Assembly (NCBI GenBank): GCA_965285935.1
Contig: OZ260662.1
Span: 82,150,001-82,214,000 of the forward strand
Length of the DNA: 64,000 nt
DNA from: Ophelia neglecta
Taxonomy: Eukaryota
Direction: 5' to 3'
Part shown: piece by piece, positions 1 through 59,290 of the stretch
Layout: each line of letters begins with the position of its first letter
Numbering within the stretch: position 1 is the stretch's first letter
The notes under the pieces: generated by a model
The model's input: the letters and a program-made list of their open reading frames with translations, nothing else
Database searches by the model: none
What the model was told of the DNA's origin: nothing
Translations under genes and position numbers: made by a program

Positions 1-157
1 ATGACGTCATTTGCACAACCATGATGGCCGAAATCTTGTCTCACACATCGACCCATCGCCATTTGCCCATACTGGGCTGACGTGATGAATACGACCTCGT
101 CTTCGGCACATTCAGGCCTGAAGGTCTCCGAGTTACAAAACTCTGTTTCTTCAAACA
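1..157 (-). CDS. Gene C, SUEL-type lectin exon (duplicated copy 2, truncated by window edge)
   Basis: Same acceptor and sequence as 1239-1395 except one substitution at position 22 (CTT Leu -> CAT His). Confidence 0.7.
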
Positions 158-1104
158 CTGGAAATAAATAAATGGTTAATTTTGCATATTAAGAAGCTTA
201 TTGTTGTTTTCGGCGTTAAATGGATTTAAATTAGAGAGAAAATTAAACCATCTTAGTGCAATTATGTCACATTGCCAGCCGTAATGAGCTAACAAGTATA
301 GCCCTATGTCAAAGATAGTATCCAAATTTAAAAAATGTGTAATAAACCATGAATACTTGTTCAAAGACTCAATGTGTCATGAAAGCCCCGCTTAGATTCT
401 ACACTATGCCGCCCTAGCATTTATTACGGATGTAAGAATGAATTAATAGTCTGAATGGTCAACCCTCTCCTAAACGTGTCCAGGCCAATATTTATCATAT
501 TGCCTTCCTTTTTTTCACTTTACACATTATGCTTGGTCCTTTTATTGTTCTTTATTATTACATTGCTTTAGGAAGTTAGAAGGGGGCTACCCACTTTATT
601 GAGTTATTCTGGCACATTCCATCGCAGTCATACCTTTAACTGTCATTATTCTCGACTGGTGGGGTAATTAGCAATAAGAATAACATTTTAATAGTATGGA
701 ATTCGGCTTTTTAATTTAGACAACTAAGGCATTATCTTGATAAATATCATGTCCAATATATGATTGCGCATTTTCTAACATGCACATTTGAAGTTCTTGA
801 TATAGGTTCCGAACCAATGACGAGTATTTTATTTACTGGAGAAATATGACATTCTCATTGTTTGCGCTTAGCTGATAAGTATGCTGTGGCTGAGATCGAA
901 ATACAAAGGGTTTTATCAATTATATCAATTATATCAGACAAACGTAATAAAACAAATATTGGCTTGCGTTCCAGAAGCAATATGGACTCGGTACATTGAA
1001 ATTTTTTATAAGTACTGTAACAATCGGCATAACTTTTTTTGTAGTTTTTGCTTTTTTTAACAACATATGCACTCACATATCTACAAATAATGTATACAGT
1101 ATAC

Positions 1105-1395
1105 CTTTTACACATTTGTAGGCGACCCTCAGGTAAGACCTACGGGGTTCAGGACACGGTCTAGCCCATGGAAACGTAGTTTCGTTGACGAATACTTCAC
1201 ACGTTTGACGTCCACCACATAGATTATCCATTTGCGGCATGACGTCATTTGCACAACCAAGATGGCCGAAATCTTGTCTCACACATCGACCCATCGCCAT
1301 TTGCCCATACTGGGCTGACGTGATGAATACGACCTCGTCTTCGGCACATTCAGGCCTGAAGGTCTCCGAGTTACAAAACTCTGTTTCTTCAAACA
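1105..1395 (-). CDS. Gene C, SUEL-type lectin exon (copy 1)
   Basis: ttccag acceptor and G|GTATAC donor; 291 nt, phase 1-1. 67/97 aa identical to the gene B lectin exon; 8 Cys. Confidence 0.9.
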
Positions 1396-2258
1396 CTGGA
1401 AATAAATAAATGGTTAATTTTGCATATTAAGAAGCTTATTGTTGTTTTCGGCGTTAAATGGATTTAAATTAGAGAGAAAATTAAACCATCTTAGTGCAAT
1501 TATGTCACATTGCCAGCCGTAATGAGCTAACAAGTATAGCCCTATGTCAAAGATAGTATCCAAATTTAAAAAATGTGTAATAAACCATGAATACTTGTTC
1601 AAAGACTCAATGTGTCATGAAAGCCCCGCTTAGATTCTACACTATGCCGCCCTAGCATTTATTACGGATGTAAGAATGAATTAATAGTCTGAATGGTCAA
1701 CCCTCTCCTAAACGTGTCCAGGCCAATATTTATCATATTGCCTTCCTTTTTTTCACTTTACACATTATGCTTGGTCCTTTTATTGTTCTTTATTATTACA
1801 TTGCTTTAGGAAGTTAGAAGGGGGCTACCCACTTTATTGAGTTATTCTGGCACATTCCATCGCAGTCATACCTTTAACTGTCATTATTCTCGACTGGTGG
1901 GGTAATTAGCAATAAGAATAACATTTTAATAGTATGGAATTCGGCTTTTTAATTTAGACAACTAAGGCATTATCTTGATAAATATCATGTCCAATATATG
2001 ATTGCGCATTTTCTAACATGCACATTTGAAGTTCTTGATATAGGTTCCGAACCAATGACGAGTATTTTATTTACTGGAGAAATATGACATTCTCATTGTT
2101 TGCGCTTAGCTGATAAGTATGCTGTGGCTGAGATCGAAATACAAAGGGTTTTATCAATTATATCAATTATATCAGACAAACGTAATAAAACAAATATTGG
2201 CTTGCGTTCCAGAAGCAATATGAGCCATATTGGCCTTAAGCATTTTTTTGGTGAGTGG

Positions 2259-2292
2259 GTGTGTGTGTGTGTGTGTGTGGGGGGGGGGGGGG
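2259..2292. repeat. (GT)10 followed by poly-G
   Basis: Direct reading; a similar (GT)n-polyG tract lies at 11151-11178. Confidence 0.9.
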
Positions 2293-2671
2293 TCCTAACG
2301 CCCTTAGAAAAATATCACTTGCTTCAGGCCAAATTAATAACTCCGAATTGCGCCATCAGCAAGCCAATAATTGTGCATTTACGAAACCATCTTACTGGTA
2401 AATTTCACCCAATAAAATAAGTCGCTTTTTCGATTGCCAAATTGTTCAAAATAAAACAAATTTTAGGTTTAAGGCATTATTGCCTTCTGTCTATGCACCG
2501 TATAGTATTCATAGAAATGAAGGGAACCAAAAGCCTCCGATGAAATTTTTGAGCAAGAGCCCTCGGGATTAGAGAAAATTCCGAGGTAAGTTCGCAAGTC
2601 AAATCTACCAGCTCCCGACATGGTGAGCTTGTCCAACTGGTCTGGCAATGTAAACGATACAAACGTCTTAC

Positions 2672-2774
2672 CTGAGGCCTCGCCGTCACAGTCTTGACTG
2701 AGGGTGGGAGCTATCAGTCCACAAAGACACAGCGTATGGATTGTCAGCAGAATTGTTACTGCTTTCCGTTCCAT
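2672..2774 (-). CDS. Gene C, exon 1 (signal peptide)
   Basis: MERKAVTILLTIHTLCLCGLIAPTLSQDCDGEAS with G|GTAAGA donor; 103 nt, phase 1. Confidence 0.85.
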
Positions 2775-2840
2775 TTTTAGTGTCTCTCCTTATATGTGAA
2801 TAATTTCTTTATAAACCTGATTTGAATACACCAACTCGAT

Positions 2841-2979
2841 GTAAGCAATCGTATATTATTGCCCTTACTACGAGAACAGCAGCCACGGACCCGAGACAGT
2901 TCACACGAATCGTTCCGGCCTCTTACATAAATGTTACCCTCTCCAACTTATTGGTGTGAAATTTATGCACAGTTGTTGA
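2841..2979 (-). promoter_or_regulatory. Upstream block of gene C homologous to 25138-25290
   Basis: Same ordered conserved words as the gene B upstream block. Confidence 0.55.
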
Positions 2980-3364
2980 GGTCTAATACGAGAATGATCA
3001 CTGGCAATTGCCGCCTTTTTGAGCCAAAATTGCCATTGATCGTCTGGACGGCCGGTAATAACATGTCTGCTGCCTAGCTTTGTAGCTATGTAATTTTGGA
3101 ATAATTTGCACTTTTTAGGTATTTAGGCCTACATAGATTTTGTTGATAAAAGTGTTGTCCCAAAAACCGAAACATTACTCATGTGTAATATATGATTCAA
3201 TTTGTGTCAAATATTAAAAATGTAATTGTGCGCCATTATTCCCGCATGTGCGGTTTTTTACTGTTACATATGGCAAGTAAACAAGTGGGCTGCTTTAAAT
3301 GGAACACGAAATGGCCCCAGGGTTTCATGTGTTTCAAAGCGATGTATTTCCGTACTAACGTTAG

Positions 3365-3590
3365 ATGTGATTGTTGAGCAGCGACCGCGATTGGTTGAAA
3401 GAAAAATCAATAAGACTACTGTTAATGCGTTGACCAGATGGCGCCTGAATCATCCAAGGGTGCTCTTCTCTATGGAGCCACATCCGGTCTTTTCTGTAAT
3501 ACGGCTAGACAAATGTCTCTCCACCCCGGTTACAAGCACGCGTCCTCTGTAGTCACAACGAGATTGAGGAATCATCACCGCAATGGTACA
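3365..3590 (-). pseudogene. Truncated, frameshifted CUB-like exon relic of a fourth paralog
   Basis: Aligns to the 5' half of 8920-9327 (IAVMIPQSRC...LSSRITEKTGCGS / HPWMIQAPSGQRINSSLIDFSFNQSRSLL). 5-bp insertion near 3463-3467; homology is lost after about 3365. Confidence 0.85.

Positions 3591-4447: not shown

Positions 4448-4448
<1 letters not shown>

Positions 4449-4482
<34 letters not shown>
4449..4482. repeat. (TA)17 microsatellite
   Basis: Direct reading. Confidence 0.95.
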
Positions 4483-6829: not shown

Positions 6830-7346
6830 TTAAACGGATAGATTTCCGTTATAAGAAGGTACCCTAGGTTTGCTAGTCACATTTGCAACCTGCCCACGAC
6901 TTGACGGGTCGTTTCTTTGGCCGGTTGCGCATGTGCAATAGTTGTCATGACTGCATGTGGATTGGTTAGATGTCTGTGAACGCACTGGCAGTACTTGGGG
7001 GTCAATGTCGAAATACTGAGGAGAGCCTTGATCGGCGAGATCTCGTCTTATAGTTTCCGGACTCTCGTAGATGTGTTCGGATGGTGTGTACATTCCCCGC
7101 CTATATGATGTAGTTATACTGGCGAATTCCTGTCCGTTCTCTATGGGGTTTTCTCTGTCATAAAGCGCGCCAGGACGAAGTAGCCTCATGCTAGCATACT
7201 CATTCTCTCGCATGCTGGCATTGGCGTCTGGGGGGTAGCCACCTGGTGGCAGAGTTTGAGATGTGTCGTATTTTTGATGGGGATAAGTCTCGGCATTCGA
7301 CGGTAGGTCTCCGTTAGCTGATTGTCTTTGTCCTCTTTTCATTCTC
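6830..7346 (-). CDS. Gene B, terminal exon, Tyr-rich cytoplasmic tail
   Basis: ctttcag acceptor in phase 2 gives TRMKRG and reads open to TAA. Motifs NEYASM, EHIYESP and PQYFDID; ends ...NLSV. Total spliced CDS is 1605 nt (534 aa + stop). Confidence 0.88.
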
Positions 7347-7667: not shown

Positions 7668-7749
7668 GTCTTGATGCATACTACTCCAATCACAAGTATT
7701 AAACAACTCACAGTGACTGCTATGGCTATGATCAGCACTATCGATATAC
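7668..7749 (-). CDS. Gene B, transmembrane exon
   Basis: ttgcag acceptor and AC|GTAAGT donor; 82 nt, phase 1-2. GISIVLIIAIAVTVSCLILVIGVVCIK. Confidence 0.88.
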
Positions 7750-8118: not shown

Positions 8119-8172
8119 CATAAGGTAGCGACTTGACGCTTTGAACCACGTTGGCAAGGAAGGCTGACTGAG
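8119..8172 (-). CDS. Gene B, stalk exon
   Basis: Long pyrimidine tract plus ttttag acceptor, G|GTCAGT donor; 54 nt. AQSAFLANVVQSVKSLPY(G). Confidence 0.75.
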
Positions 8173-8368: not shown

Positions 8369-8518
8369 CTGTCGAGCAGATTCCAGCGGTGCCAGCCCAC
8401 TTCTGACCGTGACAGGTTAGTTCCCAGCGCGACTCGTCCTCACAACCTAACAAGGCAGTCTTCCCATCCCTCTTCAACCAAGCCCCATCCGGTATCTCGG
8501 GATCAGGACAACCAATAA
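8369..8518 (-). CDS. Gene B, 4-Cys Sushi/CCP-like exon
   Basis: ttccag acceptor and G|GTAGTA donor; 150 nt. VIGCPDPEIPDGAWLKRDGKTALLGCEDESRWELTCHGQKWAGTAGICST, with CP.P..C..C..W..C as in CCP modules. Confidence 0.85.
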
Positions 8519-8919: not shown

Positions 8920-9327
8920 CTTTATAATGAAGAAGGAACTGTGGCTTTACTGGCGAAGCCGAGTTGGCCAAAACCCGTACCTCCACCACGTTTTTCGTAG
9001 ACACATAGACATTGACTTCTCGTCCTTGAGATCCGCATACCGTAGTACTGCGCATGGCGGAAGTCTCACGTATTGTAGCGTACACCTTACAGACACGGGG
9101 TATACTCTGGCCATCTAGCAGCGACTGAGAGTGGTTGAAGGAAAAATCCATCAGAGTAATGTTGACGTGCTGGCCAGAAGGCGCCTGAATTATCCAAGGG
9201 TGCTCTGTGGAGCCACATCCGGTGTTTTCTGTAATACGGCTAGACAGATATCCCTCCGCCTCGGTCAGTGGCACGCCCTCAGTGTACTGGCAACGTGATC
9301 GAGGAATCGTTACTGCAATCAACAATT
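8920..9327 (-). CDS. Gene B, CUB-like domain exon
   Basis: ctatag acceptor (an in-frame alternative AG would start the exon at 9312) and G|GTATAG donor; 408 nt, phase 1-1. EGYLSS..GCGS..PWIIQAPSGQHVNITLMDF..C.VYATI..VCG..STKNVVEV..FLLHYK. Confidence 0.88.
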
Positions 9328-9543: not shown

Positions 9544-9834
9544 CTTTCAAACACTTGTAGGCTACTCTCAGGTGAGACTTGAGGTCTTTATGACACGGTC
9601 TGATCCCTGGAAACGTGGTGTCGCTGATCAATACCTCACATGTCTGACGTCCACCACACAGAGTATCCACATCCGGAATGACGTCATTTACACAACCGAG
9701 ATAGCCGAAGTTTTGGGCCACGCACCGACCGATTTCGAATCGCCCATACTGAGCTGACATGATGACTATAGCCTCGTCTTCGGCACATTCAGGCTTGAAG
9801 GTCTCTGAGTTACAAAACTCTGTCTCTTCAAACA
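9544..9834 (-). CDS. Gene B, SUEL-type lectin domain exon
   Basis: ttcacag acceptor and G|GTACGG donor; 291 nt, phase 1-1. VFEETEFCNSETFKPEC...AQYGR..GRC..GC..LCGGRQTC..RPC..SHLRVAYKCLK (8 Cys). Confidence 0.92.
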
Positions 9835-11780
9835 CTGTGAAAAAAAGTAAATGCTTATTTTATCTTTTATTGTTTAGCTTATATAATGTCGTGTTTATCG
9901 TTCAGCAGCTAAAACTTGAGAGAGAAAGCAGCAATTGTGTTTCATTGAAAGCCATAATGAGCTAGCAGGTTTGCCAAAGATAGGAGCGAAATTGAATTTT
10001 ATAATATAAGTATATAAAGAAAGATGAATATTTTGCGAAGAGGCACTGTGACATAAAAGACCCGGTTATATTCTATACTATACAGGACTAGCTTATATTA
10101 AGAATATCGCCCTCCTGCTAGCTTTTACCGTCCGTATTAAAGGCGATAGCGGAAAGCAAGAGAGATCGGTTACATTATAGCTGAGACAGGCGAGAGTCAT
10201 CTTTGGTTATGGAAGCCATATAGGTTCCAGAATGATAAATCATCATCAGCTGGGTTATCAGTACAGATGATGTCTTTGAATGTCGCTGCCATTTATTCAT
10301 TTTGCCCCACAAACTCGACATGATTCGGTATGCTGTTTCGACTTAGCATCATCATGCTAGCTTTATCGTGCTAGACAATTGTTGAGGACAAATAGGCCAA
10401 CACGCATTTTAACAATCAATACACCAACTAAAATTGAGGGATATGGCTGTTGTGTTTTGGTGCGCTTAGAATCCCGTGTCTTTTACAATAATCAATAATG
10501 GTTTGTTGGCAGACGACATCCCGCCATTGTTGCCGTCTGTGGTCCCTCTTCCGGGATACGCGGGTGACTCGATTGGGATGGTTCCCCGTCTCGGGTGACA
10601 GCGGGTATTAATTAACGGGTGACACTGATCAATCAGGGTGACATTTGATAGTCTAATACTCTGAAAGGGCTCCTCACCGAGCGGCAGTGTCGGCCTGTGA
10701 ATAGCGATTACAGAAAGGCTTTCGATCGGGTCATTTGTTCGGTTCACAGCCACTAATGGTTCGTTTCAAACATTATAGTCCCTCAAACATTTTGAGTTTT
10801 GTCAGGCGTTGGCTCTATTCATAGCCTTTAATCGAGTCCAATAATTTGTCGTGTCTTGATTATCTATGAGTGAGTGAAAAATATCGAGGTTTCTCTATCA
10901 TATGGGCAATACCCTCACTGCGGTTATAACGCTAGGATGGACACGCATGCGGAGTAGCGGATAGGCTACAATGCCAGAAACACTGGGAAAAAGTTTTTTT
11001 TGCCAAGTCGATCACCGCGCGCGGATTCAGAAAAGGGAGGTAAAACGGCAATAGGAATGACGGAGATATAATTAATGCATCGGAACGGACAGGGTATTGG
11101 CCTGTACCGCGAAAATGGGTTTAAACTTTTGAATATATCTCTTCGAACAAGTGTGTGTGTGTGTGGGGGGGGGGGGGGAGTTAGGAGTCGATGCCAAAGG
11201 GTTGGTAACGAGATAATATGATTTTAAAGGGATTTCACAGCGGTATAAATCAAATTTATAGTCATAAGCATTATGCTATTAAACATCATTAAAAAGGAAT
11301 ATATGAGACTTAAAATGTTAAGATGGCGGGTCACCTTGTTCCTTTTTTAGCTACAAGCAATTATACCAGCTTCTAATCTTTTGTTGAACAGCATTTTGTT
11401 TTGCAGGTAAGTTCATGAGTCAAAGTGTTGATAACACTTCCGTTTCTGCCTAGTGGGTTGGAAACAAATCTAATGACATAATGTTGCCCCAATTATCTAC
11501 TTCGTGAATGGCTGAGCCCTCGATGACGCTTGCAGTACATATACTGTGTACAGTGACGCGCTGCAATCACTGATGAGCGCGGTTCTCAATACTGGCGTTT
11601 TCTTGTTATTTATTTTACCATTATTGGCAACATCGATTATAATAATATTCCAAAATGTGCTACTTCTGACGATATTAGTTGACAGGGTAACTTTACTAAC
11701 TTTGAACTAATGATATTTGTAGATGGGATACAAATGCTATTGGATTAACATAGAAGCGTGCACTCTACAAAAGATAAAAG

Positions 11781-11925
11781 TACGCTGGACCTCTTCCACG
11801 CGTGCACGGTTCACGAGAATAGCATGCTCTAACACTCTCTAATAAATATACGATGGACCTCTTTCACACGTTCACGGTACACGAGAATAACATGCTCTAA
11901 CACTCTCTAATGTTAGTACGCTGGG
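11781..11925. repeat. 68-bp tandem duplication (2 copies + partial)
   Basis: TACG.TGGACCTCTT.CAC.CGT.CACGGT.CACGAGAATA.CATGCTCTAACACTCTCTAAT repeated at offset 68. Confidence 0.85.
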
Positions 11926-14900
11926 CGTGAGCACGGCTGGTTCCCGTGACTGTGTTAGTGATTTCAAAAATCAATATTGAAATTACACTCAATTATTTTT
12001 TCATTATATAAACTTTATTTCAGTTTGAATAAATGTTGTATTTTGTTAGTTTATTTTGAGCATGTTCTCCGATGCCTGTAAAATCATGACTGTATGAAGT
12101 AGCCAGAGTTGGCTCTGATGTAACGACTGAGTCAATGACAGGGGGGGGGGGGGGGGGGGAGCACCAGGCTCATTCGGCCTGGTCGTCGTAAATCCCGAGG
12201 GCCCGGATATAAAGATTATCCACGTGATCTATGTACGCTGGTACCCCGGTGATCAGAGCGTGGTTGGCAAGGTTTATGACCCCATACCAGCCCTATAGAT
12301 CGCAACCAGCCCTTTAATCATGACTAAGCCCTTCAACATACAGGGAACCAGTGTATACTGCTCGGCATCCTGGTGTAAATGAAGAAATAAAGTTGCAACA
12401 CGTTCCCGTGAACAAACGTTAGCTATACATATACATATATATACATTCTATAGTCACATATTCTTCACAAGTGTAAATCATACCATTTCTGCGATGGCGA
12501 CTTGCGAAACCGCATTTTCTCTAATAGTTATTATTGTTTTCATTCAAGTCAATTCGACAAAAACACTGTGGTCAAAATACACAGTTGTATACTATTTATA
12601 AATAATGTCTAAGAAACGGCCATTACAGAACATATTTCCATAATTTTTAGAATGTGTTTAAAGATATATAGGTCATTCAAGTCCAGTTAAAGACAGCATC
12701 AGTTATCTTGTGATCTCACTCCTCGGAATCAACAAGACACCTGTCGACGCCTTTCCGATATAAATCATCCCGTGGAAACAATTTACGATACATAGCTGAC
12801 CATAATTTATTCGAAATATCGCACTACTGTCAGTAGATCATGGTATCAGCTGGAACAAAAGACGACTCCTGGAGCAGCCTTTGGAAAACTGCCAGTGGCA
12901 AATTGTCCAACAAAAGAACAACTTGGGTAGTTTACTTAACCGATCTAAAAGGAGGAGGAAAGCAATAGAACAATGAATGTCTCGCCGAGAGAATAAAACT
13001 TGATTTGACGGTAGACCACATGTGTGCGGTGTGGGTTTAGGCGGTTGAATGGCTAGTGGAGTTCACCCCGGGACTACTTCACACCTGGGTGCAGCTTGTT
13101 CCGCGGTCCCCATTCGCATCTTGGTATCCGATAATCAAAACCATTGGGAATCGGTGTAAGGCCCTTGATTAGATATCATGTTCGGTATTAATTGTTCCAG
13201 TCCTGCATAACGACGTCATACAGGGATTGTAGCGTCTTGAAGCTAGAGATTGCCAAACGCTCGTCCCCCGGGGCATTCTTTGGAATGATGCGGGGCATGC
13301 TGGGGGATTTCTCTAGGGACTGCAGCGTCCCTCGCGGAAGGCTCCCACAGTAGCGTTCCGAGGCAGATAACCATAGGTTGTCTCCCGGGAGAAAACTAAA
13401 CCCTCGGGAAAAAAGTGTGCCTCCGCATAAGCTGATTCGATTATGTTAAATTAATTGAAGATAATGACTTGTCGAGGGAAAGGCTGATATATTCTGATGG
13501 GCGAACTTTTTTGTCGGGTTTTAACATGAAATCATGAGGGATCCCGTCTGACAGCAAATCACACAAAGCGTAAAGTAGGCAGAAAACATCATGTTGTCAA
13601 CGGGTTGTCATTGCAGCCGATTTCATTAATTTCGGAGTTGATTAGCTAGGATTTTCCTGTATTTGTTTTAAAGTGGGAAATCAAATACCCAGGCATCACA
13701 CTAAATTAATGTGTACCGGTAGTGGCAATTAAAAAGCAGCAACTTACTGCGAAGAACACGACTGGGATTTGGTGCGTGACTGACGTGTCTTTATTGGTAG
13801 ATTTAGACCGCTTGTCGGCAGATTGCACAATCGGTAATGGGAGAATTTATCATGCCGACAAAAGCAGAGTTGATAAGGTACACTCGTAGTCACACAAAAT
13901 AAATCTATCTGCGAGTAATGGTCATCAGTGATGACGAGCTAGCACTGCGGACGGCTGTCACGCCAAACCAATGTGGCATTACCGACAGGCAGCCCCAGTA
14001 AACGCCTCCTTCAATTCATTTCAGACGCCAGAAATGACCATCAGAAAGCATGCGAAACATGCTGCTGGGGTGAAATCCATTTGAAGAGCATTCACGACTA
14101 AGCACCATGGCGAGTGTTTTTGGCAGGCAGCCACTAGAGTCTAGTGTTGAGAACGAGATTGCATGATCCAAATTGTTCTTCATACGCCTAAATCCCAGAA
14201 ATCGCGATGTGTGTGGCGACATTAGAGTGTGAATTGCTCCTAGCTACAGCATTTGCTAAACACCCACCATCTATTTTGACAAATAATCGTCCACCAATAA
14301 ATAGGAATTGTCTAAAAGTGGTTTGTTCAGGCCATGCCGTCCGACAAAGACAACACATAGATAACATGTAATGAATTGAATCGTATTTCAATTCAGAGCG
14401 CCCTTTTGGGGAACAGGGGTCTTTGTTTCATGTGGACAAAACCATTTTTGGCCGTTGAGTCATTTGGCAGTCTCAGCACACTAAGCTGCTAAGTGGTAAT
14501 GGAATGGCATGCCCGATTGCTTGCCCATAGACGCCTAGTCATTGAAAAGTGAAATCCTTCCCACCCTCCGCACGAAATGGCCATCTGTGAACAGCCTCAT
14601 TTGCGAAGACACAACATTTTGGCAGTGATTGGGGCATTAAGACCTGACGTGGAAGGAATTTTAATCGTCTGGTTGTCTTTGAAGACGATGGACGAGCATT
14701 TCGCATGAGATACTGCCTCATGAAGCCGGGAGATGTGGCGTGATTGGGAATAATTAAACAGTTATGGTCTCTTTTTACTAGTAATTGGCGCTTTTCACTT
14801 GACATATCAAATAGACTGTTTCTGTAATAAGATTAATCAATTATTGAATGATCCCCGGATCGACGCTCATAACATACATATTGTGCTTTGAAATCAAGGA

Positions 14901-24744: not shown

Positions 24745-24847
24745 CTGAGGACTCCCCCTGCCTGTCTTCACTGTGGGAGGGAGCTATCAGTCCACAAAGA
24801 CACAACGTCTGGATTGTCATAAGAATAGTAACTGCTTTCCTATCCAT
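24745..24847 (-). CDS. Gene B, exon 1 (signal peptide)
   Basis: AAAATGG start, MDRKAVTILMTIQTLCLCGLIAPSHSEDRQGESS, G|GTAGGT donor. 103 nt, phase 1, clearly paralogous to 2672-2774. Splices in frame to 9834 across a 14.9-kb intron whose two ends are homologous to the ends of gene C intron 1. Confidence 0.8.
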
Positions 24848-30059: not shown

Positions 30060-32330
30060 TTGTAAACTACTTAAAATCTAATAGTCTTCCTGTGGGATAT
30101 TTAAGGTATAAAACTCAGTAGGTCACAGCTATACAGCTATGTCAGGTGACAGGGCTTACCTTGTAAAAAACTCAAGTCGGAGGCATTGGAAAAATAATTA
30201 TGCCTTAAAAAAGAAAGTTCTTCCGTCGCTGGTAAAAATGAATCACAAAAAGGTCCCCATAATAAGATGGAGCGCACAGACGAAAGGAGAAAGGTTAAGC
30301 TATCAGTTAGATAGCAAGGCGCAATTCCATTTATTCATTTAAAAAGCAAAAGAATTGCAAAAAAATTCAGAAATAGACCAAAAATGCTTGTGATTCAATC
30401 AATAATTCCAGTAATACATATTGCTTTTCTGTTTTGATAAGCTGTGCTTTATGCAAACTCCTTTTGACGACAGTAGTGTTACCCCAAACTGTTATACTTG
30501 GCCGAAATGCGGCTGCACAATTGTATTATTAATATTCATATGATTTCACGACTTACTTTGCCTCTTAATCTATACGCCAAATTCCAATTTTGGCCGATAT
30601 TTTGTTACATGAATTACTTGCATGAATACCCAATTTTGTTTCTCGTCAAATGCAATCCAAGGTATTTCATATTTTCAACATATTTATTAGGATTTTCATA
30701 TCATCAATTGATTAATATTTTCATGAATGAACCATAAGGGATGAACCTATTTTCACAATACAGTTAACCACCTGGGAGGAACCTATTTTCACAATACAGT
30801 GAACCATATGGGGGGAACCTATTTTCACAAAACAGTGAACTATATGGGTGAAACCTATTTTCACAATACAGTGAACCATCTGGGAGGAACCTATTTTGAC
30901 AATACAGTGAACCATGTTGGAGAAACCTATTTTCACAATACAGTGAGCCATCTGGGAGGAACCTATTTTCACAATACAGTGAACCATCTGGGAGGAACCA
31001 ATTTTCACAATACAGTGAACCATCAGGGAGGAACCTATTTTCACAATACAATGAACCATGTGAGAGGAACCTATTTTCACAATACAGTGAACCTTCTGGG
31101 AGGAACCTATTTTCACAATACAGTGAACCATCTGGGAGGAACCAATTTTCACAATACAGTGAACCATCAGGGAGGAACCTATTTTCACAATACAATGAAC
31201 CATGTGAGAGGAACCTATTTTTACAATACAGTGAACCTTCTGGGAGGAACCTATTTTCACAATACAGTGAACCATCTGGGAGGAACCTATTTTCACAATA
31301 CAGTGAACCATCTGGTAGGAACCCATTTTCACCATACAGTGAACCACATGGAAGGAACCTATTTTCACAATACAGTGAACCATCTGGGAGGAACCTTTTT
31401 TCACAATGCAATGAACCATCTGGGAGGAACCTACTTTCGCAGTACAGTGAACCATCTGGGAGGAACCCATTTTCACAATACAGTGAACCATATGAAAGGA
31501 ACCTATTTTCACAATACAGTGAACCATGTGGGAGGAACCTATTTTCACAATACAGTGAACCATATGGGAGGAACCTATTTTCACAATACAGTGAACCATC
31601 TGGGAGGAACCTATTTTCGCAATACAGCGAACCATCTTGGAGGAACCTTTTTTCACAATATAGTGAACCATATGGGAAGAACCTATTTTCACAATACAAC
31701 AATTAGTTAATTTAATTGTGAGACGGTTGGTTTTCAAACCATTTTAGCGAATTGCCAGAGTTCATTTGGAGAGATTTCTCAACTTCTTCTTAATATGTGA
31801 AACACACTGTTTGAAGAGCGGTGTCATCCGCTTGGACAGCTTGCATACGTAAATTCAGTTCACTGTCTGGTAAACCAATCATTGACATAAGCCATAATGC
31901 CCAAATTTTCGGAGAAAAAATTGGTAAACTTTAGTATCAAAGCGTTTTTGAAAAATCCCCCAACCAGGCCATCATTCACACCATCCAATCAAGTAATTCT
32001 ATAATCACTCTCCAAAGAAATATCTGCTGAATTTTGTTCTCTGTATCCTGCCTGATCAGAACAAATAAAATCTTGTTTCGTAAGTTATTCCTTGAGTTGT
32101 CGTTGGGCGAGTTTTCAATCAGTTTGGCAATCTGGAATATGTCTCAAATTGGTCTGTAATAATCAAGTGACTCTTGTGGCCCCTTTGTGTTTGTATACTG
32201 GAGTTATCTTAGCAGATTTCCAATCTTCTGGTAAATGACCAGTTTGAAGAGAGAGATTGAATAATCTAGTCCAGCACAAGTTTTCTCCACAAAGCCTATC
32301 AATTTTTGTATGTTGATCCGAGGTGGGACA
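30060..32330 (-). mobile_element. Degenerate CR1/L2-type non-LTR retrotransposon (RT region), interrupted by a minisatellite
   Basis: Broken-frame translations RLFNLSLQTGHLPEDWKSAKITPVYK (32178-32270), YRPI, AFDT (~31940), ADDTAL (31814-31831), NRLTI, VENMKYLGLHL (30647-30679) and INGIAPCYL (~30300) occur in canonical order. Many stops and frameshifts; ends approximate. Confidence 0.85.
30729..31697. repeat. 36-bp minisatellite, about 27 copies (GAACCATCTGGGAGGAACCTATTTTCACAATACAGT)
   Basis: Direct reading; 12-aa periodicity in three ORF frames; 144-bp (4-unit) higher-order duplication. Confidence 0.97.
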
Positions 32331-48351: not shown

Positions 48352-48832
48352 TCATACAAGCTGAAGGGCATTGTCTTTGGACCTGTCACCTTCGTCTTTC
48401 GAATCAAGTTGCATATTCAGCGCACTCGAGGCTGATAAGTCTGCTGGATTTCGATATTGCTCCAGCTCAAAATACATTAATGCATCCTGGTTGAAAGACT
48501 TGCGCGTGACATCCGGTGCTGCGCACGCATGTTTTTTGCAATGGCAACTATGGGTCCCAAGCGTATGTTGCCAATTGCTTTTACAAGTATGTGGAGAATG
48601 TACGGAGTATTGCACAGTTGTTTCGCTATCCGCCGACAGAGGCGCTGGTTGAGGAGAATATATGTAATCGTCATAGTCTCCTTCCGCTTTATTGAGCTTG
48701 CGCGCATCACGATGAACGTATGTTTGGTAATGAGGATGGACCGTGCCTCCGGTAGGTTCTTTGTACATGCTGGCTGTCACCTCCCCATACACTGCACACG
48801 AGTGACCTTGACTCGCAGGTCTTCGGCGTCTC
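48352..48832 (-). CDS. Gene A, terminal exon, Tyr-rich cytoplasmic tail
   Basis: ttttag acceptor in phase 2 gives the KRRRRP stop-transfer cluster and reads open to TGA. Contains DYIYSP and MYFELE motifs and ends ...ALQLV. Confidence 0.8.
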
Positions 48833-49102: not shown

Positions 49103-49184
49103 TTCCTGAATAATATCAAGCCGGTGATGACCACACAGAGACCGACTATCACGGCAATGCTCACCACCACCACTATTATAAACC
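49103..49184 (-). CDS. Gene A, transmembrane exon
   Basis: ctatag acceptor and AA|GTAAGT donor; 82 nt, phase 1-2, the same length as the gene B TM exon. GFIIVVVVSIAVIVGLCVVITGLILFRK. Confidence 0.85.
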
Positions 49185-49588: not shown

Positions 49589-49651
49589 CATTTGGTAGTG
49601 AGCTAATATAATGGAGAAACTCACTTCCTGTCATTTCTTCTTGCTGTGTGC
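49589..49651 (-). CDS. Gene A, juxtamembrane stalk exon
   Basis: ttttcag acceptor and G|GTAGGT donor; 63 nt. STQQEEMTGSEFLHYISSLPN(G) ends like the gene B stalk KSLPY(G). Confidence 0.7.
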
Positions 49652-50203: not shown

Positions 50204-50368
50204 TAGGTGTAGTAAGGGAGCAGTTCGTGAGGGGGCGACTCCATGCACTTTCTTTGCATTCCAGCCTCGTTATCATCCCGGTAGAGATACAACGCACGAC
50301 GACCTCAGTGGCTGACTTCTGAACGATCTCCTGATTGTCATACAACACAGGGAGCACGCAACCAAATG
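50204..50368 (-). CDS. Gene A, 4-Cys Sushi/CCP-like exon
   Basis: tttacag acceptor and A|GTAAGT donor; 165 nt, phase 1-1. AFGCVLP...VVVRC...RLECKESAWSRPLTNC has the same C..C..C..W..C spacing as gene B exon 8369-8518. Confidence 0.8.
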
Positions 50369-54445: not shown

Positions 54446-57400
54446 TAATGTCCGGAGTGGTTATAAGGGGGGGGGGGCAGTGAAAATATTTCATTTACTC
54501 TAAAGACTGGAAGAGGGAATGTTACTCTGAAGCCCGAGATGGGGGGGGGGGGGTGATCTGAATTTGAAACATTATCTGACTCGGGCTACATATTTATTTT
54601 ACACCGAGATTGTCAAATTACCGCCGCGAAAATTCTTAAAATTTAAGTTATTGGTTTTGTGAAGTGAAAACGACCGACTGACCTTGTTAACATAATTTAT
54701 ACCCAACTCCACTGAAAATCGTTCACCAATTATGTTAATGAAATATAATGAGAAGGAATGGTTTTGAAGAAAACGAATTAGGTTCCCTGTACATCTTTTC
54801 CGCAAATCCAATTTATCTGAGCAGATAACTCGTGACTCTATACAAAATTTGATTTTAGCAAAATTATCAACTCCTACTGAATAGTAAATGTGACAAAAAG
54901 TGTACATATAGGGTGCGCAAGGCCAGATGCTGGTAGACAACAGATGGGACACAATTTAGATTTATTACAGCGAACCTATTGGGGGATTGAGCTCATTTGG
55001 TACATCATATATATGTTTTTATTCAACAAAATATTTCGAATTGGGAAATGAAATGCCACGAACCGAATTAACGGAGACATAAGTAATGCATTAAATATGT
55101 TTTTAATTGGAAAGGCAAGCATGGATTCTTGGCTTGACTGATCTGCTGGCCGAGTCTCAATTTAGGACAACATGTTGTGGGTGATAACTGTCCGTTCGAT
55201 TAAGTTCGATACACTTTGAAATAATTGTTTAAACGAAGAATCTTAATAAAATCTGTACTTTAAGGTAAATAAATCTTTGTCCACGTTTAGTTATAATCCT
55301 CCCCCTCCCCCCCCCCCCCCCCCCTTATATATGCGACCTGCCACTCCGCTTATGAAAATAAGCCAATTTCGTGCTGTAGAGGGAGATAGGACAGAAAAAT
55401 CAAGCAAGGGCTCATTACACCCACAGAATACACATTAAATACTCCGATAGATTTGTGCCAGAGGCTATCTGTTGCATGAACGAGGTAAAAAGAGATCGAA
55501 AGTTCTATCAATTTGTGTACTGTTAGCATTACCCCGTGCTCGTGCTTTATGGTCGTCAGTCCATTGAGAGATAAATGTCAAATCATTTAAGGCTAAATCT
55601 ACTATGTCGACAAAAAGGAGCAGGTGGGAAAACCGTTGAGAATGTCTACCCCGTCTCGGATATATAGTGCCACGTTCTCATGTCTGATCTTTTGCCAAAG
55701 CCTCCGCATTTAGCGAACAAAATTAACCGTTGGGAGTTGGCAGTCCCTGAACTTTTAAACTAACGACACTGAGGCGCCGCGCCTATTAATGGTAAAATAT
55801 GAGGAGGTCCGGATTATATAAAGGAGAGATATATTACAAGAACGATGAAAAACACAACAGTTTTTTTAAGAGACATCTCACATTCTTACAAGTAGCTATT
55901 GTAATTTATAGGAAACTGGTATACTCTGACAGCGTAGTTATTTTTAACAATAATGTTCAAACATTGCGCACGCGCAGGTAACAATGACATATTGTCTAAC
56001 AGCAAAGGACGAAGTCATGTTGTGTACTATGTTTTAGGTGCCTGAAGACACGGCAGCGCTCCCTGGAATTGATGTGCTGGCCGTAGAAAACTACAGAGAT
56101 ATGGTTAACGACAACAGATCCTGGTCCCATGTGGCACGTGGTTGTCAGTGAAAAATGCAAAATACAATCTCTACTGAATACAGGAACAAGCTAACAAACT
56201 GCTTTAAAGCTCAGTTGACAATGATGATAAGTACCTGGGCTCAAATAAAAATAGCAGCAGCTCTTATATCACTGGCCCTTTAACTCTTGCCAATTTGATT
56301 CCGACAATCTGCCATATACACCCGTTGTCAAAAGTAGTGACTACGAAATGGTAGCTTAGGCCTTCTGAAGATGCAAGTAAAAATATCTATGTACGGAAAA
56401 ACAGGGTATCGTGATGAAGCATTTCTTCGATTGTAATCATAGCCGAGTTCATGTTAGATTGTGAGTTACAGAAAGATGAAAGACCATTTCAATACAAACC
56501 CGGAGTCGTCAACATAATGAGTGGGCAACCAAGTCGAAGGGAATTCGGAAAGGATACATGGAATATTTACATGCTCAGATGTTCTGTGTAGTTTCCCTGG
56601 CCTCGGGTTGATGCGGAAATTGAAGCTTTAACCCTAGTTTACGCACCATTTTACCTCGGTAAATGTCTCCATGGGACAACGGACATGCTATTCATACACT
56701 GTGTTACGAAGCGGATGTCAATAAAACGGCTCTACGATGTTGAGCAAATATTGGATTGTTCCTATCAGAACGCGATTTAACCTTGAAAAGATGATTAATG
56801 AAATTTGAATAAGTGTACAGAACCTTCAGATTGTTGATTTTTACCGACTGTAGGTGTTTTCTATATCAAAACGGCTGTCGTTACTTCCATTGTTGGTTGT
56901 TCCAAATTAAGCAGAACCTTTGCTAATTGGTAGAATCATTGATTAGTATTTAGTACTTGTACTGGCTATAGGCCTTTAATGGAGGACCTACTTAAATAAG
57001 AGACGTCTCGATATCATGTTCAGATAACGTCCTTTGTGTTTCTTGTCAAATATCGGTTGCAGAGAAGCAGAAATCAATTCATAACCTAGAGACTGGGTGA
57101 TAATAAGCAAAATTCATCCCAAACAAAAATTGTTGAATTGACCTACACTTTGGCATTTGTTTATTCTGTGAAGAAGAAAGCCGACCCGGATCGCATGTCT
57201 GCTAAGACGCTATGGGATGAAAAACCTCGCTACCTTTATCTTAAGAATGGCATGCAGTTGATGAACTACTGAATCAGATAGGACGGAGACACTGTCAGTC
57301 AGAGAAGCTTTGTTTGCTTGCCATCGAGTTGTCATTGTTATGAGGCCAGCAGCACAAAGGCCAGGAAAGACGTGGAGGTAATTACATGACTCGACGCGGA

Positions 57401-57647
57401 AAACGAGAGTCACGCACGTCAATGTACGTTCTCAAATGTACCACTCACATTTTATTAATTACTATGCCGGAAATTCGAAACAAATGAACCCTTTCAATGA
57501 AAGATCACGTTTAAAGGAGAGGTTAGAGTGGAAGATGAAAAGAAGGTGATTGCTTGGAGATTAAAGCTTCTCAAATCAGCAGGTCAAAGCAGGCCCACCA
57601 AGGAACTGAGTGTGTCCTGGGGTACGCTTATCTTTAGGAACACTCAC

Positions 57648-58028
57648 CCTCGTATCCGAGTAGAAAGAAACCCTCCGAGCTAGGTAGATTTTCAAGTACT
57701 CGGATCTCCACACTGTTTCCCACAGAGGTATACGCGTGACTAACCCTCTGCGCGGAGGAACAAATGTCGATATCCGTACGTCCATGGAAGTCCCGGATGA
57801 CCGCATATCGTTGGCAGACGGCCCCCGCCTCAGGTCCCGCAACCGAGGCCACGCTGAAGTCGTAGAGCGTCAGATTAATACGGCGGCCTTCAGGCACGGT
57901 GATACTGTATGGGCAACCGGATGTCCCGCCATGATCACGTGACGTCACACTTCGCGCAATGTATCCTGAGTCCGATGGCAAGATGGCCTCTCCTTCTGTG
58001 TGGCAGGAGTGAGGAGGGTAGGTGGCCA
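57648..58028 (-). CDS. Gene A, CUB-like domain exon
   Basis: ttccag acceptor and G|GTGAGT donor; 381 nt, phase 1-1. SGYIA..CPYSITVPEGRRINLTLYDF..C..YAVI..IC..YTSVGNSVEI..FFLLGYE matches the CUB strand pattern. Paralogous to 8920-9327. Confidence 0.85.
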
Positions 58029-59005
58029 CTGGAACAAAAACCGCGGGAAATAAATTGGCATGGCTACGAATACCAGAAATAATTATGCAGTACGTATATT
58101 ATGTCAAGATCACCATTTTCAGTATCTTCGCTACGATTCTTTATACAGACTCTTAAACTTGAGATACCATGGTGAACTGTTATTGCCGGCAGAGAACGCG
58201 CATAACATTCGACATTCTCCGCGAAAAAAACAAAACCCGGGATTTTCGATATTTTCCGGCACTGGTTCTGCTAGGAAAATCCAAGCGCTGCAAATATACA
58301 TTCAGAAACTTAAAAAATTCATTCCTGCAGACGTCATTTTGTATAATATATTCATAACCAACCATTGTATGAGGTACTACGATTTTGTGTAGTCTACATC
58401 CTTTACCCTGCGAGCTGATTTACCAATACAATATGGTCTGAGTTATGAATTTAAATTGGGCTGATAGCCTTCAGATCAAGGCCCCCACGAATAACTTGAT
58501 TATCGCTAATTTTCGATCTATTGCCATTTTCTGAATTTACTTGTTGTCATGTTAATGTACAAAAACATGATCTTGTGAAATGTGACACGACATTCTGTTG
58601 GATGGGTATATGCATTGACATAGAGAAGGCTATGATCAGACTCGGCATTAAGTGGAAAGCTAAACCTGTTAAGTAACCACGAAGCACTGTACATGGCAGG
58701 TATTTCCGTGTCGAGATTTGTCGCCGAACAGCCGATGAAACAGGTGTTCTGATTGAGACCCACGTTTTCTAGACGTGAAGTACGTCAGGACATGTAGTCA
58801 GATAAGACCTAGCCCATGATCGTTAATAATTTTCCCCATGGCTAGACACTCGAATGAGACACATATATATTGTAAGCCATAAATAGAATTTAAGCAGTAG
58901 AGGATGAGTGTACTTTGCATTGGCATCGTGTGTACATATGGATTATATTTTTCTTTATAAATGGACGTTTCTTGCAAATGAACTTATTTAGTACAAAAAA
59001 CTTAC

Positions 59006-59290
59006 AAGGTACACATTTATAGCTGGCTTCCAAATATCTCGTCAGATCTCCTATGCAGGGTTGAGCGGCATCCATTTCTGGGTCCGGTATTCGTATTTTG
59101 CACCCTCTTCTGCCAGAGCACTTCCGGTCCAGTATAGCGAGCATATTGGCCGAGCATCCGATGAAGCCAAAGTCCACTTTCACGCAGCGCCCAAGTCTCA
59201 TACGACCATATTGCGCATAATTCATAACAAGGACTTCGTTTTCACCACACTTGGCTTCAAATTCCTCTGTTGAACAATATTCCTTTATTT
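59006..59290 (-). CDS. Gene A, SUEL-type (galactose/rhamnose-binding lectin-like) domain exon
   Basis: ttcacag acceptor and T|GTAAGT donor; 285 nt, phase 1-1. Reads (E)IKEYCSTEEFEAKCGENEVLVMNYAQYGRMRLGRC...QPCIGDLTRYLEASYKCVP, with 8 Cys and the YGR and PC..YL motifs of SUEL domains. Paralogous to exons at 9544-9834 and 1105-1395. Confidence 0.9.

What the first reader, a model, noticed from the sequence alone, without database searches (positions are those of the whole stretch)
1..59290. Tandem array of an orphan lectin-CUB-Sushi-TM receptor family with a Tyr-signalling tail
Seen: three same-strand paralogs plus a relic, built from one exon per domain (signal, SUEL, CUB-like, 4-Cys CCP-like, stalk, 82-nt TM, tail). 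Intron phases are 1-1-1-1-1-2 in B and identical over the shared exons of A. Established: SUEL domains occur in rhamnose-binding lectins, latrophilins and EVA-1/EVA1C, but those have tandem SUELs, olfactomedin/GAIN/7TM, or no CUB; CUB+CCP pairs occur in complement and neural proteins (C1r/s, CSMD, SEZ6, LEV-9/10). I do not recognise a named protein with SUEL-CUB-CCP-TM in one chain. Inference: a lineage-expanded, birth-and-death receptor family for cell recognition (immune, allorecognition or neural wiring). This is the best candidate for an undescribed system here.
Basis: partly seen in the sequence, partly recalled or inferred. Interest (0 to 1): 0.8.

Follow-up and report, generated by a model that had tools for sequence, protein, structure and literature searches.

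The report
Annelid SUEL-CUB-sushi membrane receptor genes
The window holds two intact genes, one truncated young copy and one fragment of a very large, worm-specific family of single-pass cell-surface receptors (lectin-fold head, CUB, short sushi module, membrane helix, tyrosine-motif tail) that databases list only as hypothetical proteins and whose ligand and role are unknown.

Summary
On the minus strand there are two complete genes (A, 59290-48352; B, exon 1 at 24847, then 9834-6830). There is also a young duplicate C (2774 to beyond the window start) and a frameshifted CUB fragment (3590-3364). Each domain has its own exon, with intron phases 1-1-1-1-1-2 and an 82-nt membrane exon. A Capitella teleta relative has the same exon plan.

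- **Domains.** SUEL passes Pfam's threshold. CUB is supported by profile and by fold. The 4-Cys module has a sushi fold but no sequence match.
- **Selection.** B has an ortholog in another species, with synonymous sites saturated, 66% protein identity, an identical membrane helix and conserved tail blocks (NEYASM, EHIYESP, YFDxDP).
- **Gene C.** It lacks the sushi, membrane and tail exons. It has lost its CUB splice donor, carries a 1239-bp duplication of the lectin exon, and took about four times more amino-acid changes than B.
- **Lectin function.** All three SUEL domains lack the two residues needed for rhamnose/galactose binding, so "lectin" is doubtful.
- **Family.** At least 130 CUB exons in this genome. 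Named relatives are annelid hypothetical proteins only, and no paper describes them.
- **Gaps.** No RNA data exist for this species, and function is untested.

This scan has already found the same family in at least eight other windows of this genome.

The parts
59006..59290 (-). Gene A, SUEL-fold exon (285 nt, phase 1-1)
   Evidence: Pfam SUEL_Lectin 35.9 bits, above the 31.4 cutoff. Splice sites. Family HMM E 9e-40.
57648..58028 (-). Gene A, CUB exon (381 nt, phase 1-1)
   Evidence: Family HMM E 3e-29. Pfam CUB is weak, 14.6 bits. A relative with 60% aa identity lies in a marine metagenome scaffold, pS 0.71 and pN 0.26.
50204..50368 (-). Gene A, short 4-Cys CCP/sushi-like exon (165 nt, phase 1-1)
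   Evidence: Family HMM E 8e-5. Aligns with the invariant C..C..C..W..C pattern of alignment A3. Splice sites.
49589..49651 (-). Gene A, stalk exon (63 nt, phase 1-1), ends SSLPN|G
   Evidence: This is the only open phase-1/1 AG..GT candidate that ends in the family's SLPxG motif. The assignment is inferred; there is no RNA.
49103..49184 (-). Gene A, transmembrane exon (82 nt, phase 1-2)
   Evidence: Hydrophobic helix followed by a basic stop-transfer stretch. Family HMM E 5e-4.
48352..48832 (-). Gene A, cytoplasmic tail exon and stop codon
   Evidence: Phase-2 acceptor. Holds 10 Tyr, including YKEP and YFEL. The family HMM match is weak, E 0.27.
24745..24847 (-). Candidate exon 1 (signal peptide) of gene B, 15 kb upstream of its SUEL exon
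   Evidence: 78% nt identity over 280 nt to C's exon 1 region, with a CAG|GTAGGT donor in phase 1. No better candidate lies between 9.8 and 24.7 kb. The ortholog contig also shows no exon 1 within 9.4 kb upstream. The assignment to B is inferred.
9544..9834 (-). Gene B, SUEL-fold exon (291 nt, phase 1-1), 8 Cys
   Evidence: Pfam SUEL_Lectin 40.1 bits, above the 31.4 cutoff. Nearest solved chains are an L-rhamnose-binding lectin (5h4s) and latrophilin RBL domains. The Glu after Cys1 and the loop-2 Lys are both absent.
8920..9312 (-). Gene B, CUB exon (393 nt, phase 1-1), 4 Cys
   Evidence: The profile of 101 homologs hits only CUB proteins among PDB sequences, with cubilin at 4.4e-7. The AF2 model has pLDDT 90.8, and all top Foldseek hits are CUB domains, TSG-6 at 1.2e-4. 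Pfam CUB scores 18.7 bits, below the 21.4 cutoff.
8369..8518 (-). Gene B, short CCP/sushi-like exon (150 nt, phase 1-1), 4 Cys and an invariant Trp
   Evidence: No Pfam hit and no PDB-sequence hit. The AF2 model has pLDDT 84. VIA-align gives Z 5.0-5.2 and rmsd 2.1-2.3 A with all 49 residues aligned, and every listed hit is a CCP module.
8119..8172 (-). Gene B, stalk exon (54 nt, phase 1-1), ends SLPY|G
   Evidence: Best open phase-1/1 candidate, with a pyrimidine tract of 0.89. It has the same 54-nt size and the same SLPxG end as the Capitella exon.
7668..7749 (-). Gene B, transmembrane exon (82 nt, phase 1-2)
   Evidence: Splice sites. The Capitella relative has the same 82-nt exon. All 26 residues are identical in the ortholog of another species, although pS is 0.72.
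6830..7346 (-). Gene B, cytoplasmic tail exon and stop; 11 Tyr; motifs NEYASM, EHIYESP and YFDIDP
   Evidence: Family HMM E 9e-9. 59% identical to the ortholog, with perfectly conserved motif blocks. EHIYESP is retained next to at least 8 paralogs in the genome.
3364..3590 (-). Relic: N-terminal half of a CUB exon, split over two frames
   Evidence: tblastn and HMM hits fall in two frames. 82% nt identity to C's CUB exon.
2672..2774 (-). Gene C, exon 1 (signal peptide)
   Evidence: An ORF with an N-terminal hydrophobic core and a CAG|GTAAGA donor.
1105..1395 (-). Gene C, SUEL exon, upstream copy
   Evidence: Pfam SUEL_Lectin 42.6 bits. 69% aa identity to B.
1..157 (-). Gene C, SUEL exon, downstream copy. 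It runs on to 134 nt before the window start. C's CUB exon lies 390-781 nt before the window start.
   Evidence: One amino-acid difference (Leu/His) from the upstream copy.
984..2222 (.). Second unit of a 1239-bp tandem duplication (the first unit runs from 253 nt before the window to 984) that doubles C's SUEL exon
   Evidence: 99.84% identity, 1 mismatch and 1 gap. A junction-specific unitig at 955-1013 appears in all three DNA runs at roughly a third to a half of flank depth.

Best explanation
**What A and B are.** Both are intact genes for type I single-pass membrane receptors. The domain order is signal peptide, one SUEL (rhamnose-binding-lectin fold) domain, one divergent CUB domain, one shortened CCP/sushi module, a short stalk, a membrane helix, and a 160-170-residue disordered tail. 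They belong to a very large family that, as far as named sequences show, is confined to annelids.

**Most likely mechanism (inferred).** The SUEL-CUB head binds a protein ligand or a non-canonical glycan. It does not use the canonical rhamnose/galactose site, which is missing. The conserved membrane helix takes part in receptor assembly. Conserved tail tyrosines are phosphorylated by cytoplasmic Src/Abl-type kinases and dock SH2 adaptors:
- NEYASM, a YxxM type
- EHIYESP, an IYxxP type
- YFxxDP

**Gene C.** It is a young duplicate of B that has lost its 3' half. It is either decaying or now encodes a secreted SUEL-SUEL-CUB protein.
For: **Shown**
- Exon models with canonical sites and phases 1-1-1-1-1-2.
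- The same exon plan in a Capitella teleta relative: CUB 390, CCP 156, stalk 54, TM 82 nt.
- The same domain order in uninterrupted 500-580-aa ORFs on about 2-kb transcript-like contigs of other species.
- SUEL passes Pfam's cutoff in A, B and C.
- CUB is supported by profile (cubilin 4.4e-7) and by fold.
- The CCP module is supported by fold.
- B has an ortholog with saturated synonymous sites (pS 0.77) and pN 0.215. Its TM is 26/26 identical and its tail motif blocks are conserved.
- A's CUB has a 60% relative with pS 0.71 and pN 0.26.
- EHIYESP is kept next to at least 8 paralogs, although the tails are otherwise unalignable.
- The sugar-site residues are absent (alignment, read against PMC2430599).
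- Gene C: no 3' exons within 30 kb, donor GT>CT, 35 versus 8 polarised amino-acid changes, and omega B-C 0.46.

**Inferred from established knowledge**
- pYxxM binds p85-type SH2 domains.
- pYxxP binds Crk/Nck/Abl-type SH2 domains.
- I-Y-x-x-P is a preferred Abl substrate.
Against: - No RNA run exists for this organism. Splicing of these particular genes, B's distant exon 1 and A's missing exon 1 therefore remain unproven.
- No kinase, adaptor or ligand is known.
- The tyrosine motifs could instead be sorting signals (YxxPhi).
- The CCP assignment rests on a 49-residue model, with Foldseek E about 0.5 and Z about 5.
- CUB in A and B is below Pfam's cutoff.
- Loss of the canonical sugar site does not exclude another glycan-binding mode.
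Confidence: 0.6

Rival explanations
1. Auxiliary or co-receptor subunit. The protein does not signal by itself. It assembles through its membrane helix and CUB domain with a channel or another receptor, as the CUB-TM proteins NETO1/2, SOL-1 and LEV-10 do with ionotropic receptors, or as neuropilin does with plexin.
For: B's membrane helix is 26/26 identical to the ortholog while synonymous sites are saturated. The feature search puts NETO2 and CUB/Sushi clusters among the nearest named look-alikes, at 0.80-0.85, which is lead level only. NETO2 and neuropilin CUBs are among the fold hits.
Against: A family of more than 130 genes is unusual for auxiliary subunits. The tail carries conserved Tyr motifs, not only the helix. 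No LDLa or other NETO-type module is present.
Confidence: 0.17
2. Glycan-recognising pattern-recognition or endocytic receptor. The SUEL head binds microbial or self glycans, and the YxxPhi motifs drive uptake. The family expanded as an innate-immune repertoire.
For: The SUEL fold passes Pfam's cutoff. Some family members from other species keep Glu after Cys1 (P0028, P0088, P0150). The family is very large and clustered. YASM and YFDI fit the YxxPhi pattern.
Against: A, B and C lack both the Glu after the first Cys and the loop-2 Lys. Even conservative changes at those positions abolish rhamnose/galactose binding in latrophilin RBL (PMC2430599; alignment). B is a conserved one-to-one gene, not a fast-evolving one.
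Confidence: 0.15
3. The exons are dead remains of a decayed array, or chance ORFs, and not working genes.
For: Gene C is truncated with a lost donor, a CUB relic is frameshifted, and no RNA evidence exists for this species.
Against: All exons of A and B are open with canonical sites in the right phases. B and A have cross-species relatives with pN far below saturated pS. The exon plan is shared with Capitella.
Confidence: 0.03

Closest known systems
Unnamed annelid 'SUEL-type lectin domain-containing proteins' (Capitella teleta ELT96203.1, ELU09978.1, ELU05650.1; Paralvinella palmiformis KAK2147095.1)
   Same: Same domain order, the same one-exon-per-domain plan and intron phases, and the same tail motifs. 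These are true family members.
   Different: They are only 35-45% identical to A and B. None has a name, an expression record or a function, and no paper in the searchable library cites them.
EVA-1 / EVA1C (Slit-Robo co-receptor)
   Same: A single-pass membrane protein with SUEL/RBL domains that lack the sugar-binding residues. PANTHER's 'PROTEIN EVA-1 (Gal_Lectin)' label was applied to an over-represented gene group in Alvinella (PMC12403961).
   Different: EVA-1 has two tandem SUEL domains, no CUB or CCP, and a FAM176-type membrane/cytoplasmic region. Here there is one SUEL, then CUB and CCP, and no FAM176 match.
DCBLD1/DCBLD2 (ESDN) and CDCP1
   Same: Works-like comparison: a type I receptor with a CUB domain beside another binding module, a single helix, and a tail whose YxxP-type tyrosines are kinase substrates and adaptor docks. 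Both appear among the nearest named look-alike clusters, at 0.80-0.81, lead level only.
   Different: There is no LCCL, discoidin or CDCP1-type CUB here. No sequence homology was shown outside the CUB fold. The function of the tail motifs here is untested.
CUB-CCP proteins (C1r/C1s/MASP, CSMD, SEZ6)
   Same: CUB followed directly by CCP. C1s CUB2-CCP1 and MASP CCP modules are among the fold hits.
   Different: There is no EGF or protease domain and no repeated CUB-CCP units. The CCP is shortened (about 45 residues from the first to the last Cys) and undetectable by sequence. A SUEL head is present.
Latrophilins (ADGRL) and soluble rhamnose-binding lectins
   Same: These are the nearest solved SUEL domains (5h4s, 8suf, 6ske, 2jx9), with the 8-Cys pattern and the YGR motif.
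   Different: There is no olfactomedin, GAIN or 7TM domain. The protein is not soluble and has no tandem repeats. The sugar-binding Glu and Lys are absent.

Membership tests
SUEL/RBL lectin domain (Pfam PF02140) | Match to the domain model above the curated cutoff; 8 conserved Cys | tested here: met
   B 40.1, A 35.9 and C 42.6 bits, against a cutoff of 31.4. Eight Cys are present in each.
Functional rhamnose/galactose-binding lectins | Glu at +1 after the first Cys, and the loop-2 Lys of the KYL motif (both required; PMC2430599) | tested here: not met
   B and C have Cys-Asn, with Ser at the Lys position. A has Cys-Ser, with Arg at the Lys position (alignments; criteria read).
CUB domain | Sequence-profile match to CUB | tested here: met
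   The family profile A2 hits only CUB proteins among PDB sequences, cubilin at 4.4e-7. Family member P0146 passes Pfam's cutoff with 25.7 bits. A and B alone are below the cutoff, at 14.6 and 18.7 bits.
CUB domain | CUB beta-sandwich fold with two disulfides | tested here: met
   The AF2 model of B's exon has pLDDT 90.8. The top Foldseek hits are almost all CUB domains, with probability 1.00 and TM 0.5-0.57. Four Cys are present. The model carries extra short helices, so this is a divergent CUB.
CCP/Sushi domain | Sequence match to the Sushi model | tested here: not met
   There is no Pfam hit even at E 10. The profile of 23 exons finds no CCP among PDB sequences.
CCP/Sushi domain | Four-Cys, one-Trp pattern and the CCP fold | tested here: met
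   The pattern C..C..C..W..C is invariant in 23 sequences. The AF2 model has pLDDT 84. VIA-align gives Z 5.0-5.2 and rmsd 2.1-2.3 A over all 49 residues, with CCP modules only among the hits. The scores are modest because the domain is small. Disulfide pairing was not checked.
EVA-1/EVA1C | Two tandem SUEL domains plus a FAM176-type TM/cytoplasmic region, and no CUB | tested here: not met
   A and B have one SUEL followed by CUB and CCP. There is no FAM176 match in the tails or in ten full-length relatives.
Latrophilin/ADGRL | Olfactomedin, HormR, GAIN and a 7TM region after the SUEL domain | tested here: not met
   There is a single hydrophobic helix, and none of these domains appears in Pfam scans.
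Phosphotyrosine-signalling receptor (functional class) | Tail tyrosines are phosphorylated and recruit SH2/PTB proteins | not testable with these tools
   Only motif conservation is shown.

The most novel reading that the evidence does not exclude
The family, with more than 130 genes in this genome and known only from annelids, may be a diversified recognition system. It could serve innate immunity, self/non-self discrimination or cell identity. Variable SUEL-CUB heads would read ligands, and a conserved helix plus SH2-docking tyrosine motifs would transmit the signal. Conserved one-to-one members such as B would be core receptors. Young truncated copies such as C would be soluble decoys or raw material for new members.
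Probability: 0.2. Interest if true: 0.75.

Novelty: new variant of a known kind. Interest (0 to 1): 0.55.

Why it matters
Large lineage-specific receptor families often underlie immunity, allorecognition, gamete or larval recognition, or neuronal wiring. Annelids have no well-described family of this sort.

This report gives three things that make direct experiments possible:
- exact exon models for two intact members;
- a conserved ortholog pair that pinpoints the constrained parts, namely the membrane helix and three tyrosine motifs;
- the finding that the "lectin" head has lost the canonical sugar site.

The experiments that follow are binding partners of the phospho-tail, ligand search with the ectodomain, and knock-out in a tractable annelid.

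The truncated copy C, carrying a probably heterozygous duplication of the lectin exon, gives a snapshot of how such families gain and lose members.

Tried and rejected
- **RNA evidence.** The run search found only three DNA contig sets from one sample, so junctions could not be tested. I used the single read-laying run on the exon duplication instead.
- **Word-based protein search.** With the eight-sequence alignment, and with P0146 residues 27-300, it returned only the queries themselves. The alignment's low-complexity tails swamped the word index.
- **B's tail against its own genome.** No match but itself at E 0.01.
- **C's missing exons.** I searched 30 kb downstream with tblastn at E 5 and with the family HMM and found nothing.
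- **CCP by sequence.** Neither Pfam at E 10 nor the PDB-sequence profile gave a hit.
- **A first guess for B's stalk exon (7896-7839).** Rejected because no open phase-1/1 combination exists there.
- **A's exon 1.** Not resolved. Candidates lie beyond the window end, at about 331-415 nt and about 2.4 kb past it.
- **Weak similarity of A's tail to the SUEL exon.** At 24% identity and E 0.007 I judged it chance.
- **Other ORFs.** The ten longest other ORFs in the window have no Pfam match.
- **Literature.** Searches for the architecture, for the Capitella accessions and for SUEL-type lectins in annelids found no description.
- **Joined spliced models.** They were not sent to any search or fold tool. 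All searches were run exon by exon by reference. The joined B and A models were checked only for frame and stops in a local script.
Full report
**What is in the window**

The window is G000:C2:82150001-82214000 of a 762-Mb, 223-contig genome. All features of the finding lie on the minus strand. ORF listing, tblastn with the exon peptides and a family HMM locate the following:
- Gene B: 9834 to 6830, plus a signal-peptide exon at 24847.
- Gene C: 2774 to beyond the window start.
- A CUB fragment split over two frames at 3590-3364.

**Exon models**

Every exon has a canonical AG acceptor and GT donor in the expected frame.

| Exon | Gene B | Gene A |
|---|---|---|
| SUEL | 9834-9544 (291 nt) | 59290-59006 |
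| CUB | 9312-8920 (393 nt) | 58028-57648 |
| CCP-like | 8518-8369 (150 nt) | 50368-50204 |
| stalk | 8172-8119 (54 nt) | 49651-49589 |
| TM | 7749-7668 (82 nt) | 49184-49103 (82 nt) |
| tail | 7346-6833, stop 6832-6830 | 48832-48355 |

With the exon at 24847-24745 the B model is 1587 nt, or 529 codons without a stop. A gives 485 codons without its first exon. That frame check was done in a local script only.

**Independent support for the models**

No RNA run exists for this organism, so the support is comparative.
- The Capitella teleta relative ELT96203.1 (P0050) has the same plan on its genomic locus. Its CUB exon is 390 nt, CCP 156, stalk 54 and TM 82, with phases 1-1-1-1-2 and a stalk exon ending in the same SLPxG motif.
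- Uninterrupted ORFs of 500-583 aa with the same domain order lie on contigs of about 2 kb from sequencing-run assemblies of other species. P0023 occurs in two runs; the others are P0028/P0151, P0049 and P0146. This size and continuity fit spliced mRNA.
- B has a clear ortholog on a 51-kb contig of another species (L040), with SUEL, CUB, CCP, TM and tail in the same order.

**Domains**

- **SUEL.** It passes Pfam's curated cutoff in all three genes: B 40.1, A 35.9 and C 42.6 bits, against 31.4.
- **CUB.** The exons of A and B are below Pfam's cutoff (14.6 and 18.7 bits against 21.4). A profile of 101 homologous exons hits only CUB proteins among PDB sequences: cubilin at 4.4e-7, then PCPE-1, enteropeptidase, TSG-6, GPR126 and NETO2. 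The AlphaFold2 model of B's exon has pLDDT 90.8. Its top Foldseek hits are almost all CUB domains, with probability 1.00 and TM 0.5-0.57. This is a divergent but real CUB.
- **CCP-like.** The 4-Cys exon has no sequence match to Sushi, either in Pfam at E 10 or with a profile against PDB sequences. An alignment of 23 such exons shows four invariant Cys and an invariant Trp. The model has pLDDT 84 and aligns over all 49 residues to CCP modules only (SPICE, MASP-2, CD55, factor H, IL-15R alpha, C1s) at rmsd 2.1-2.3 A and Z 5.0-5.2. Foldseek E-values are not significant, as expected for so small a domain. I read it as a shortened sushi module, supported by fold and Cys/Trp pattern only.

**Is the head a lectin?**

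The latrophilin RBL study (PMC2430599) shows which residues bind rhamnose/galactose:
- the Glu directly after the first Cys;
- the Tyr of YGR;
- a loop-2 Gly;
- the loop-2 Lys.

It also shows that E-to-D/Q or K-to-R changes abolish binding. In the HMMER alignments to 5h4s and 8suf and in my alignment, the window's domains lack both key residues:

| Gene | After first Cys | At the Lys position | Other |
|---|---|---|---|
| B | Asn | Ser | |
| C | Asn | Ser | YGQ instead of YGR |
| A | Ser | Arg | |

By that criterion none of the three has the canonical sugar site. In this they resemble EVA-1 and PKD1L2, whose RBL domains are thought to bind proteins. Some relatives in other species do keep the Glu.

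**Selection**

- **B against its ortholog.** Over 468 codons there is 66% amino-acid identity, pS 0.77 (saturated) and pN 0.215. The TM exon is 26/26 identical although its pS is 0.72.
- **B's tail.** It is 59% identical to the ortholog, with perfectly conserved blocks: RENEYASMRLLRPG, LYDREN, SYRRGMYxPSEHIYESPETIRRD, SPQYFDxDPQ, TCSHxxYCTCATGQ, and a GNLS(V/L) C-terminus.
- **A's CUB exon.** It has a 60%-identical relative on a marine metagenome scaffold. That copy begins at an acceptor in the same place, with pS 0.71 and pN 0.26.
- **Conclusion.** A and B are constrained genes. B in particular is a conserved one-to-one gene, not a fast-turnover copy.

**The tail**

B's tail matches nothing else in its own genome by HMMER at E 0.01. 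Yet the back-translated EHIYESP pattern occurs 13 times against 1 for the reversed control. At least 8 of those sites lie on the right strand 1-2 kb downstream of family CUB exons. The same three motifs recur in relatives from other species.

From established SH2 specificities:
- YxxM fits p85-type SH2 domains.
- I-Y-x-x-P fits Abl substrates and Crk/Nck/Abl SH2 domains.
- The acidic-flanked YFxLDP resembles half-ITAM-like YxxL sites.

This is inference. Sorting signals (YxxPhi) are an alternative reading.

**Gene C and turnover**

- **Relation to B.** C is 72% identical to B over signal, SUEL and CUB, with dS 0.36, dN 0.17 and omega 0.46. The intron distance is 0.24. It is therefore far younger than the species split seen with L040.
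- **Missing 3' half.** Neither tblastn nor the family HMM finds a CCP, TM or tail exon within 30 kb downstream. Exons of an unrelated plus-strand gene begin there.
- **Lost donor.** At the position of B's CUB donor (AAAG|gtatag) C reads AAAG|ctataa. The frame then runs four codons to TAA.
- **Faster change.** Polarised with the ortholog, 35 amino-acid changes fall on C's branch and 8 on B's. All four C exons are still open.
- **Reading.** C is either a recently disabled copy or a secreted SUEL-SUEL-CUB form.
- **Exon duplication.** Its SUEL exon is doubled by a 1239-bp tandem duplication at 99.84% identity.
  - In contigs of three DNA runs of one sample, the unit start at 984 is preceded either by the unique left flank or by the unit end.
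  - The junction-specific unitig (955-1013) has about a third to a half of the flank depth, and the unit about 1.2-1.45 times the flank depth.
  - This fits a real, probably heterozygous duplication.
  - Caveats: the sample may be the one that was assembled, and the unitig has 29-30 letters per side, just under the tool's 31-letter bridging rule.
- **Relic.** The fragment at 3590-3364 is the first half of a C-like CUB exon, 82% identical in nucleotides.

**Family size and range**

- B's CUB exon has 138 matches in its own genome at E 0.01. About 58 are near full length, on C1, C2 and C5.
- There is also a dense weaker block at C5:92.5-93.6 Mb. Only 150 of 213 candidates were scored.
- The SUEL exon of P0023 had 470 first-look candidates.
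- More than 40 copies elsewhere are closer to B than A is, so A and B are old paralogs that happen to be neighbours.
- Against 1.84 billion representative proteins the CUB exon has 1544 hits at E 1e-3 and 455 at 1e-10. Most are single-exon ORFs from assemblies.
- Every named hit I looked up is an annelid hypothetical protein from Capitella teleta or Paralvinella palmiformis.
- The feature search places P0146 in a cluster of 106 members, all Annelida.
- I could not run a taxon-labelled search of other phyla, so "annelid-restricted" means "no named relative elsewhere".
- On this evidence the genome is probably an annelid. The species was not identified.

**Literature**

- No paper in the searchable library describes the architecture or cites the Capitella entries.
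- A rotifer lectin survey states that the role of SUEL lectins in lophotrochozoans remains elusive (PMC8878817).
[quoted passage not shown] This is plausibly the same family, but I did not test that.

**Earlier notes of this scan**

At least eight other windows of this genome were reported with the same family, including a block of about 1 Mb. Two notes cover C's exon duplication and the B/C lectin divergence. I treated these as leads. My own results agree on the architecture, the family size, the database status and the duplication.

**Verdict**

This is a real, large, uncharacterised receptor family with a new combination of known modules. The lectin activity is doubtful, the family is already recorded though unnamed, and its biological role is untested.
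- Novelty: a new variant of a known kind (CUB-containing single-pass receptors).
- Interest is moderate.

Noticed in passing
window 14497-14681: A 185-nt block inside B's putative first intron is 72% identical to a block at the matching position of the ortholog contig, 3.6 kb upstream of the SUEL exon (L040:5723-5905). It is single-copy in this genome and not open in the other species. It is probably a conserved non-coding element or an untranslated exon.
   Followed up: partly
window 984-2222 and from 253 nt before the window to 984: A 1239-bp tandem duplication at 99.84% identity doubles gene C's SUEL exon in frame, with one Leu/His difference between the copies. DNA contigs suggest it is real and heterozygous.
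   Followed up: yes
L013 (G000:C2:82149220-82149230), just before the window start: C's CUB exon has CT where B and the family have the GT donor. The frame ends four codons later (…HYKAIR-stop).
   Followed up: yes
window 30728-31698: A 36-bp tandem repeat, 27 copies at 89% match, lies between genes A and B. It creates long artificial ORFs on both strands.
   Followed up: no
window 61620-61853 and 11774-11911: Two short tandem repeats: a 45-bp unit in 5.2 copies and a 68-bp unit in 2 copies.
   Followed up: no
window 6833-6850 (end of B's tail): B and its ortholog end in GNLSV / GNLSL, and relative P0085 ends in GNYSL. This hydrophobic-x-hydrophobic C-terminus could be a class II PDZ ligand. 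It is not present in A.
   Followed up: no
L017/L018, 13-16 kb before the window start, plus strand: Open frames of an unrelated plus-strand gene begin downstream of C (for example 123 and 130 aa pieces). They mark the edge of this small receptor cluster.
   Followed up: no
L014, 331-415 nt beyond the window end, minus strand: A candidate signal-peptide exon for gene A: Met, a hydrophobic core, and a CAG|GTTAGA donor in phase 1. A second candidate beginning MDRE lies about 2.4 kb beyond the end.
   Followed up: partly
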